Of a DNA stretch of 64,000 bases, positions 34,818 through 64,000 are shown one piece after another. The notes below the pieces were generated by a model. The model searched no databases and was not told the DNA's origin. It saw only the letters and a list, made by a program, of their open reading frames with translations. Both the position numbers and the translations under genes were made by a program. Each line of letters opens with the position of its first letter. Position 1 is the first letter of the stretch. The stretch lies in the NCBI GenBank assembly GCA_964199315.1, contig OZ116704.1, forward strand, positions 12,400,001 to 12,464,000. Reading direction: 5' to 3'. The DNA comes from Orbicella franksi. Its lineage: Eukaryota.

Positions 34818-64000
<29,183 letters not shown>

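What the first reader, a model, noticed from the sequence alone, without database searches (positions are those of the whole stretch)
40294..40308. M5-M6 loop of paralog B carries L793Q and T797I
Seen: [15 protein letters not shown] in B versus [15 protein letters not shown] in A, directly after a stretch where the two genes are nearly identical. Known: T797 contacts the steroid core and substitutions there lower ouabain affinity strongly, and L793P also lowers it. These exact replacements are not ones I can cite as tested.
Basis: partly seen in the sequence, partly recalled or inferred. Interest (0 to 1): 0.7.

Follow-up and report, generated by a model that had tools for sequence, protein, structure and literature searches.

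The report
Coral sodium pump with altered ouabain pocket
One of two neighbouring sodium-pump genes in a stony coral carries two changes inside the pocket where heart-glycoside toxins bind. One of them (T797I) made a mouse pump 63-fold ouabain-resistant in the laboratory, so this expressed, conserved pump probably binds such toxins poorly, though no reef toxin is known that would explain it.

Summary
Codons at 40308-40306 (CAA) and 40296-40294 (ATT) on the minus strand give Q and I at pig-alpha1 positions 793 and 797. The neighbouring paralog A keeps L and T.

Paralog B is an intact Na,K-ATPase alpha gene. RNA contigs carry this exon spliced and letter-perfect. B orthologues are under strong purifying selection (dN/dS 0.03-0.05 at dS 0.9-1.5).

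Q793 is found only in the B clade and in all nine hairpin lineages seen. Position 797 varies there: I, V or, in two lineages, still T. So L793Q is the older change and I797 is not a general cnidarian state.

Gene conversion homogenises A and B up to the middle of M5 in two species independently. It stops just before the loop.

T797I has in fact been tested. It gave 63-fold ouabain resistance in mouse alpha1 and was lethal as a homozygous knock-in in Drosophila. It also occurs naturally in Photuris firefly paralogs. L793Q itself is untested; L793N gave 2.8-fold, L793K 8.8-fold and L793P 24-fold.

B also has K111, D122 and V312, so it is very probably steroid-insensitive. Why is unknown.

The scan had noted this same stretch before (s1-243859), and the M1-M2 loop of the same gene has its own follow-up (s1-243810).

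The parts
40294..40308 (-). Codons 793-797 of paralog B: CAA CCC CTT GGA ATT = Q P L G I (Q793, I797)
   Evidence: Numbering comes from an ungapped phmmer alignment to pig alpha1 (4hqj/4hyt).
40258..40412 (-). B exon 14: end of M5, extracellular loop and M6. F783, F786, D804 and D808 are conserved; M785, I789, G790, Q793, I797 and I798 differ from pig.
   Evidence: Splice sites AG/GT. RNA contigs join 40256/40258 to 38734/38736 and 40410/40412 to 41673/41675. Two contigs cover the exon with 0 differing letters.
25309..25463 (+). A exon 14, counterpart of the above, with the usual L793 (CTT), T797 (ACA) and V798
40347..41776 (-). Concerted-evolution (gene-conversion) tract shared with A (A: 24670 to about 25374): exon 13, intron 13 with a box C/D snoRNA-like core, and the first 66 nt of exon 14. 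It ends in M5, about 12 codons before Q793.
   Evidence: In exon 13 plus the first 66 nt of exon 14 there are 10 sites where the two paralogs of one species agree against the other species, and 0 sites of the orthologous pattern. The rest of exon 14 gives 2 vs 10 (Fisher P = 1e-4). Exons 15-20 give 9 vs 84 (P = 4e-9)..
54502..54705 (-). B exon with M1 and the M1-M2 loop: C104, Y108, K111, D119, D122
   Evidence: (query residues 2-67 = chain 61-126 of 4hqj)
48123..48509 (-). B exon with M3-M4: Y308, L310, V312, F314 (pig has W310, E312, V314). I315, F316, G319, A323, N324 and E327 are conserved.
   Evidence: (query residues 1-129 = chain 211-339 of 4hqj)
37328..37462 (-). B exon with the M7-M8 loop: F863 and R880 conserved, E884 (pig D884), D885 conserved
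34818..55867 (-). Paralog B, 22 coding exons from 'EWHKISL' to the stop after 'ETYY' (982 residues, no internal stop). One more exon, lysine-rich, lies at 63989-64135 and runs over the window's end. The exon with the start codon was not found.
   Evidence: Gene model. Lysine-rich exon. Five junctions confirmed by RNA contigs.
12350..29964 (+). Paralog A, convergent with B. It has L111, N122, E312, V314, L793 and T797, the steroid-sensitive pattern.
   Evidence: L111/N122 also occurs in 11 of 118 M1-M2 exons from other animals.

Best explanation
Paralog B encodes a working, expressed Na,K-ATPase alpha isoform whose extracellular cardiotonic-steroid pocket has been rebuilt. The M5-M6 changes are part of that rebuilding.

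I797 removes the hydroxyl that hydrogen-bonds the steroid's C14-OH. It also puts a bulkier side chain where the cavity is narrowest. Q793 puts a polar group into the hydrophobic wall that packs against the steroid core.

These act together with K111 and D122 at the mouth of the pocket and V312 on M4. The expected result is a pump with much lower affinity for ouabain-like inhibitors than paralog A.

Shown: the residues, the intact gene, its splicing and transcription, its conservation, and the published effect of T797I and of L793 variants in mammalian pumps.

Inferred: that the same effect holds in the coral protein, and that selection keeps the loop different from A.

What selects for it is unknown. 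It could be an inhibitor on the reef, or transport properties of the outward ion pathway.
For: 1. The residues and their numbering are established.

2. Published mutant and structural data:
- T797I gave 63-fold, T797A 67-fold, T797V 79-fold, L793P 24-fold, L793K 8.8-fold and L793N 2.8-fold resistance (PMC13704064).
- Human T804N (= T797N) lets cells grow in up to 10 uM ouabain (PMC9546848).
- The C14-OH hydrogen-bonds Thr797.
- Leu793 and Thr797 are on the ouabain contact list.
- The cavity is narrowest between Ala323 C-beta and Thr797 C-gamma.

3. B is real and functional:
- It has 22 exons, all with AG/GT boundaries, and no internal stop.
- Spliced RNA contigs were found in three runs, one of them a polyA library. 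The hairpin exon is letter-perfect in two contigs.
- Every exon tested matches TIGR01106 best.

4. Selection:
- dN/dS is 0.03-0.05 between B orthologues at dS 0.9-1.5.
- Q is coded CAA or CAG and I is coded ATT or ATC in different species, so the residues are kept through synonymous change.
- Q793 is present in all nine B-clade hairpin lineages seen and nowhere else among 229 motif matches.

5. Gene conversion homogenises A and B up to mid-M5 in two species independently and stops before the loop.

6. Other parts of the pocket also depart in B and not in A: K111, D122, V312 and F314.
Against: - No binding or transport measurement exists for any coral pump.
- Effects of these substitutions depend on background. 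T797I is homozygous lethal in Drosophila and T797V cut activity to 3.4% in sheep alpha1.
- L793Q itself is untested, and L793K was not selectable in human cells at 0.5 uM ouabain.
- Two B-clade lineages (L017, L004/L014) keep T797. L017 has K111, D122 and Q793; the M1-M2 exon of L004/L014 was not recovered. So I797 is not required for whatever B does.
- No cardiotonic steroid is known from reefs.
- Palytoxin, the known reef ligand of this pump, kills rodent cells with R111/D122 pumps as readily as human cells (bioRxiv 292219).
Confidence: 0.68

Rival explanations
1. The loop changes are there to tune ion transport: extracellular K+/Na+ access, voltage dependence or turnover. They would suit a particular coral tissue or compartment, and steroid insensitivity would be a by-product.
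For: - Positions 793-798 sit at the outer mouth of the cation pathway, next to D804 and D808.
- T797V/I have strong effects on activity or viability in other backgrounds.
- No reef steroid toxin is known.
- B is an old, conserved isoform rather than a recent adaptation.
- Position 797 toggles I/V/T within the clade while Q793 is fixed.
Against: - The departures are concentrated on residues known from steroid binding (111, 122, 312, 793, 797).
- The cation-coordinating residues are all unchanged: N324, E327, S775, N776, E779, D804, D808, Q923 and D926.
- K111 plus D122 is the classic rodent-type resistance pair, and no transport role is known for it.
Confidence: 0.22
2. B protects against a reef toxin other than a steroid that uses the same outer vestibule, such as palytoxin or related polyols from zoantharians or dinoflagellates.
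For: Palytoxin binds the pump at a site coupled to the ouabain site, and it occurs on reefs in Palythoa, Ostreopsis and Trichodesmium.
Against: - Rodent pumps with R111/D122 are as palytoxin-sensitive as human ones.
- No data link positions 793 or 797 to palytoxin sensitivity.
- I found no paper on this for corals.
Confidence: 0.07
3. The differences are neutral drift in a redundant duplicate, or B is a decaying copy.
For: Within this genome alone, two of six exon differences falling on contact residues has P of about 0.1 (hand calculation).
Against: - dN/dS is 0.03-0.05 over dS near or above 1, as low as or lower than for A (0.06).
- The reading frame is intact in five species.
- The mRNA is spliced.
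- Q793 and I797 are kept through synonymous codon changes.
- Gene conversion has not erased the differences.
Confidence: 0.03

Closest known systems
Photuris firefly ATPalpha1 paralogs B-D (PMC10028858)
   Same: A duplicated Na,K-ATPase alpha gene in which one lineage combined a change at site 111 with T797I. The I797 later became V797 in one copy, and the coral B clade likewise shows both I and V at 797. The other copy stays sensitive-type.
   Different: The fireflies eat prey containing lucibufagins, so the toxin is known. They have Q111E, not K111, and no L793Q. That duplication is recent and lineage-specific, whereas the coral pair is older than the split of at least five coral lineages.
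Rodent alpha1 (R111/D122) and its ouabain-selected OR6 mutant with T797I (Cantley et al. 1994, via PMC13704064)
   Same: B carries the same combination: a basic residue at 111, aspartate at 122 and isoleucine at 797. In the mouse protein T797I added 63-fold resistance. That mouse alpha1 already carries R111/D122 is my own knowledge, not a tool result.
   Different: OR6 is a laboratory selection, not a natural allele. B additionally has Q793, V312 and F314. No measurement exists for the coral protein.
Sheep alpha1 L793 mutants (Burns et al. 1996; Palasis et al. 1996, via PMC13704064 and PMC9546848)
   Same: The same position. Polar or charged replacements (N, K) and proline lower ouabain sensitivity 2.8- to 24-fold.
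   Different: Glutamine was never made, and the effects of N and K are modest. No natural L793Q appears in the papers I read.
Gastric H,K-ATPase alpha (ATP4A)
   Same: A P2C pump that is ouabain-insensitive and departs from the Na,K-ATPase at the 797-equivalent position. This is from my own knowledge. Searches show only that it aligns over this exon.
   Different: B keeps the Na,K-ATPase hallmarks: S775, D804, D808, Q923, D926 and the C-terminal ETYY. It is therefore not an H,K-ATPase.

Membership tests
P2C-type ATPase alpha subunit (TIGR01106, Na,K / H,K) | Sequence matches the family model over its whole length | tested here: met
   All eight B exons scanned hit TIGR01106 best. Their scores add up to about 1006 bits (a rough sum) against a cut-off of 946. 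Top PDB matches are Na,K-ATPase alpha chains.
P2C-type ATPase alpha subunit (TIGR01106, Na,K / H,K) | Catalytic motifs TGES, DKTGT, TGDGVND and the PEGL motif of M4 | tested here: met
   All four are present in the spliced B translation.
Na,K-ATPase (as against H,K-ATPase) | Cation-site residues N324, E327, S775, N776, E779, D804, D808, Q923, D926 and the C-terminal YY | tested here: met
   Read from the B translation, with numbering fixed by ungapped PDB alignments. S775 is serine, not the lysine of gastric H,K-ATPase (that comparison is my own knowledge). The protein ends ...QETYY.
Na,K-ATPase (as against H,K-ATPase) | Na+-dependent, K+-dependent ATP hydrolysis and transport | not testable with these tools
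   Needs expression and assay.
Target-site-insensitive (cardiotonic-steroid-resistant) Na,K-ATPase isoform | Substitutions at positions shown by experiment to lower steroid affinity | tested here: met
   B has I797, which gave 63-fold resistance as T797I. It has Q793 at a position where N, K and P replacements gave 2.8- to 24-fold. It also has K111 and D122.
Target-site-insensitive (cardiotonic-steroid-resistant) Na,K-ATPase isoform | Measured loss of steroid binding or inhibition | not testable with these tools
   I found no published measurement for a coral pump.
Target-site-insensitive (cardiotonic-steroid-resistant) Na,K-ATPase isoform | Exposure of the organism to such toxins, made by itself or taken in with food | tested here: inconclusive
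   Literature searches found no reef cardiotonic steroid. Palytoxin is present on reefs, but R111/D122 does not protect rodent cells against it.

The most novel reading that the evidence does not exclude
Stony corals have kept, since before their main lineages split, one pump isoform that responds to a ligand of the ouabain site and one that does not. That would imply an as yet unknown natural ligand of this site in corals. It could be an endogenous steroid-like regulator, or a toxin from symbionts, prey or competitors. This would be the first such sensitive/insensitive pair outside bilaterians.
Probability: 0.15. Interest if true: 0.8.

Novelty: new member of a known kind. Interest (0 to 1): 0.55.

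Why it matters
Duplicated sodium pumps with one toxin-insensitive copy are a textbook case of convergent evolution. So far they are known from insects, toads, snakes and rodents that meet cardiac glycosides.

Here is a coral isoform with the same residue pattern: a basic residue at 111, D122 and I797. It is old, conserved and expressed, and it has been shielded from gene conversion. No toxin is known to explain it.

Either reefs hold an unrecognised ligand of this site, or these 'resistance' residues have a transport role that toxin studies have overlooked.

There is also a practical point. Ouabain-sensitive ATPase activity, a common coral physiology assay, may miss the share of pumping done by isoform B.

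Tried and rejected
- **Outgroup for the exon-9 tree.** The long representatives from the first search (P0104 and others) do not cover that region. After adding 100 exon-level homologues, the deep nodes between the A clade, the B clade and bilaterian sequences stay unresolved.
- **Order of events at 797.** The 253-column tree of five B orthologues does not resolve whether the T797 lineage L017 branches first. One gain of I, or a gain plus a reversal, cannot be told apart.
- **M1-M2 state of the Q793/T797 lineage L014.** The exons lie more than 10 kb upstream of what could be fetched, and no matching exon appeared.
- **Species names.** The orthologous contigs are unnamed ENA/Logan assemblies and run organisms are coded.
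- **B's start codon.** The lysine-rich exon (63989-64135) has no in-frame ATG, as in A, so a further upstream exon must hold it.
- **High RNA depth at 39470-39690.** This is a dispersed repeat, not an RNA gene. There was no Rfam hit across 34000-56000.
- **Original papers.** Cantley 1994 and Palasis 1996 are not held. Their numbers are quoted second-hand from PMC13704064.
- **Structure tools.** I ran no structure or complex prediction. The tools offer no steroid ligand and return no coordinates, so they could not test the pocket.

Full report
**What is in the sequence**

The window holds two convergent Na,K-ATPase alpha-subunit genes. Paralog A is on the plus strand, with coding exons from 12350 to 29964. 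Paralog B is on the minus strand, with coding exons from 55867 down to 34818.

I built both gene models from open frames, AG/GT sites and mutual similarity. Each gives an uninterrupted reading frame ending in ETYY.

The finding lies in B's exon 40258-40412. Translated, it reads ...[35 protein letters not shown]'s exon 25309-25463 reads ...[34 protein letters not shown].

An ungapped phmmer alignment to pig alpha1 (4hqj/4hyt) fixes the numbering. The CAA at 40308-40306 is residue 793 and the ATT at 40296-40294 is residue 797. D804 and D808 are conserved. The observation and its coordinates are exact.

**Is B a real gene?**

- The coral's own assembly has only these two loci for this exon.
- Logan contigs from RNA libraries, laid on 38500-44300, show five joints exactly at my predicted B splice sites. 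These are 38734|40256, 40410|41673, 41772|41952, 42132|42641 and 42745|43970, each CT..AC on the plus strand.
- Contigs from a polyA library (X14) and from run X30 cover the hairpin exon with no differing letter. So mRNA with the Q793 and I797 codons is made and spliced.
- The runs are contigs, so nothing can be said about expression level.
- All eight B exons scanned match the P2C model TIGR01106 best.
- TGES, DKTGT, PEGL and the cation-site residues are in place: N324, E327, S775, N776, E779, D804, D808, Q923 and D926.
- A lysine-rich exon of B lies at 63989-64135, across the window's end. The exon with the start codon was not found for either gene.

**How widespread are Q793 and I797?**

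- A search of 1.84 billion representative proteins with the 51-residue exon gave a top group of four fragments at 96-100% identity. Everything else was at or below about 90%.
- Together with a second search I hold 235 exon-level homologues, which give 229 matches to the M5-M6 motif. Of these, 204 have L793/T797 and 15 have Q793.
- The 15 Q793 matches split into 10 with I797, 4 with V797 and 1 with T797.
- Another 9 have L793/V797 and 1 has L793/I797. These are unrelated sequences.
- The Q793 fragments differ in their intron flanks, so they come from several genomes.
- I fetched contigs for five of them and rebuilt the genes (models).

State of each rebuilt gene:

| Locus | Gene | Loop and other states |
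|---|---|---|
| L001 | B orthologue | QPLGIV; K111, N119, D122, T312 |
| L002 | B orthologue | QPLGII |
| L012 / L013 | B orthologue | QPLGVV |
| L017 | B orthologue | QPLGTV; K111, D122, N312 |
| L004 / L014 | more distant relative | QPLGTV; exons 13 and 14 fused |
| L009 | A orthologue, same contig as L002 and convergent with it, as in the window | LPLGTV |
| L015 | second gene on L014's contig | LPLGTV |

In an exon-9 tree of 107 sequences the A clade has 23 rows. An extended B clade has 18 rows (support 94/79), and a core B clade inside it has 12 rows (100/92). The two clades are separate. The duplication is therefore older than the split of these lineages.

Q793 marks every B-clade hairpin lineage recovered. 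Position 797 is I, V or still T. L793Q is thus the older change and T797I/V came later in part of the clade. The B tree is too poorly resolved to count the events at 797. I797 is not a general cnidarian or non-bilaterian state.

**Selection**

- Between B orthologues dN/dS is 0.03-0.05 at dS 0.9-1.5. This is as low as or lower than for A, which is 0.06.
- Q793 is coded CAA in the window and CAG in L001 and L002. I797 is coded ATT, ATC and ATT respectively. The residues persist through synonymous change.

**Gene conversion stops before the loop**

- A and B are about 65-72% identical in DNA over most exons. They are 92.5% identical in exon 10, 85% in exon 12, 95% in exon 13 and 94% in the first 66 nt of exon 14.
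- I compared two species that each have both genes: the window, and L009/L002.
- Exon 13 plus the first 66 nt of exon 14 have 10 sites where the two paralogs of one species agree against the other species. They have no site with the orthologous pattern.
- The rest of exon 14 has 2 against 10 (Fisher P = 1e-4). Exons 15-20 have 9 against 84 (P = 4e-9).
- So conversion has homogenised this stretch independently in both species. In both it ends in M5, about a dozen codons before Q793.
It also suggests, without proving, that selection keeps the loop from being overwritten.

**What the residues do, from published work**

- All steroids with a C14-OH hydrogen-bond to Thr797 (PMC11193536).
- Leu793, Thr797, Phe783, Phe786, Ile800, Glu312, Ile315, Phe316, Gly319, Ala323, Arg880 and Asp884 are listed as ouabain contacts in pig alpha1 (PMC8708600).
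- The cavity is narrowest between Ala323 and Thr797 (PMC9169807).
- Resistance factors tabulated in PMC13704064:

| Mutation | Fold resistance | Background |
|---|---|---|
| T797I | 63 | mouse alpha1 from OR6 cells, Rb+ uptake |
| T797A | 67 | sheep alpha1 |
| T797V | 79 | sheep alpha1 |
| L793P | 24 | sheep alpha1 |
| L793K | 8.8 | sheep alpha1 |
| L793N | 2.8 | sheep alpha1 |

- Human T804N (= T797N) lets K562 cells grow in up to 10 uM ouabain. L800K (= L793K) was not selectable at 0.5 uM (PMC9546848).
- T797I arose naturally in Photuris firefly paralogs B-D and later became V in one copy. Knocked into Drosophila it is homozygous lethal. T797V left 3.4% activity in the sheep enzyme (PMC10028858).
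- So T797I is a tested resistance change that has a cost in some backgrounds. L793Q is untested and probably modest on its own.

**The rest of the pocket**

Numbering again comes from PDB alignments.
- B has K111, D119 and D122.
- B has L310, V312 and F314 where pig has W310, E312 and V314.
- B has F863, R880 and D885 unchanged, and E884 where pig has D884.
- A has L111, N122, E312, V314, L793 and T797.
- The L111/N122 pair also occurs in 11 of 118 M1-M2 exons from other animals.

B therefore departs at five steroid-related positions where A keeps the usual residue.

**Reading**

The best-supported reading is that B is a functional pump with a remodelled steroid pocket and low affinity for ouabain-like inhibitors. 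I797 is the strongest single contributor within the M5-M6 loop.

Why this is kept is open. No reef cardiotonic steroid turned up in the literature searches. Palytoxin is as toxic to rodent cells, whose pump carries the M1-M2 double mutation, as to human cells (bioRxiv 292219).

A transport-tuning role with steroid insensitivity as a by-product remains a serious rival. Drift or decay is excluded by the selection and RNA data.

**Limits**

- The orthologous contigs carry no species names.
- Deep tree nodes are unresolved.
- The RNA evidence comes from assembled contigs.
- The two key 1990s papers were read only through a later review's table.

**Earlier notes of this scan**

The scan's earlier notes on this window are the M1-M2 loop with its own follow-up, gene conversion at exon 10, a snoRNA in A's intron, and the paralog pair as a whole. 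Where I tested them they agree with what I found.

Noticed in passing
window 24925-25010 (+), 41320-41410 (-), 26040-26130 (+): An approximately 80-nt core with box C (ATGATGA) and box D (CTGA) motifs is almost identical in three introns: A intron 13, B intron 13 and A intron 15. It looks like a box C/D snoRNA kept in both paralogs. Rfam gave no hit at gathering threshold on the B side.
   Followed up: partly
window 57514-61521 (+), inside the 8-kb intron of B between 63989 and 55867: A retroelement with three long open frames. The second has a reverse transcriptase domain (RVT_1, E = 1e-14) and the third a tyrosine-recombinase domain (Phage_integrase, E = 1e-6), which is a DIRS-like make-up. 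The region is GC-rich (47-52% against about 39% around it).
   Followed up: partly
window 50161-50930 (-), against A 16597-16782 (+): B has an extra phase-0 intron (GTAAGA...TAG, about 770 nt) splitting an exon that is a single 186-nt exon in A. The same split is present in the B orthologues L001 and L017. This is an intron gain or loss that tells the paralogs apart.
   Followed up: partly
window 39470-39690: All four RNA runs show very high contig depth here, in the intron downstream of B's hairpin exon, with odd 212-215-nt 'joints'. The sequence looks like a dispersed repeat and has no Rfam match.
   Followed up: partly
P0052, P0070, P0072, P0078, P0084, P0189, P0229 (V797) and P0079 (I797), all with L793: Unrelated exon-level homologues from unnamed assemblies also carry V or I at position 797, about 4% of those retrieved. 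Loss of the T797 hydroxyl has therefore happened repeatedly outside the coral B clade.
   Followed up: no
window 12350-12466 (+) and 63989-64135 (-): The lysine-rich N-terminal exons of both A and B have no in-frame ATG, and each begins right after a good acceptor site. Both genes must have a further upstream exon holding the start codon. Both share the motif ATTPLV.
   Followed up: partly
L014 and L015 (one 215-kb contig, ERZ25072724): A more distant relative has two pump genes 110 kb apart on the same strand, one with Q793/T797 and one with L793/T797. Both fall in the extended B clade by exon 9, and both have exons 13 and 14 fused. This arrangement differs from the convergent A/B pair of the window.
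   Followed up: partly
window 31032-31632, with an N run at 31088-31215: Low-complexity sequence around an assembly gap lies between the 3' ends of A and B. I left it as it is.
   Followed up: no
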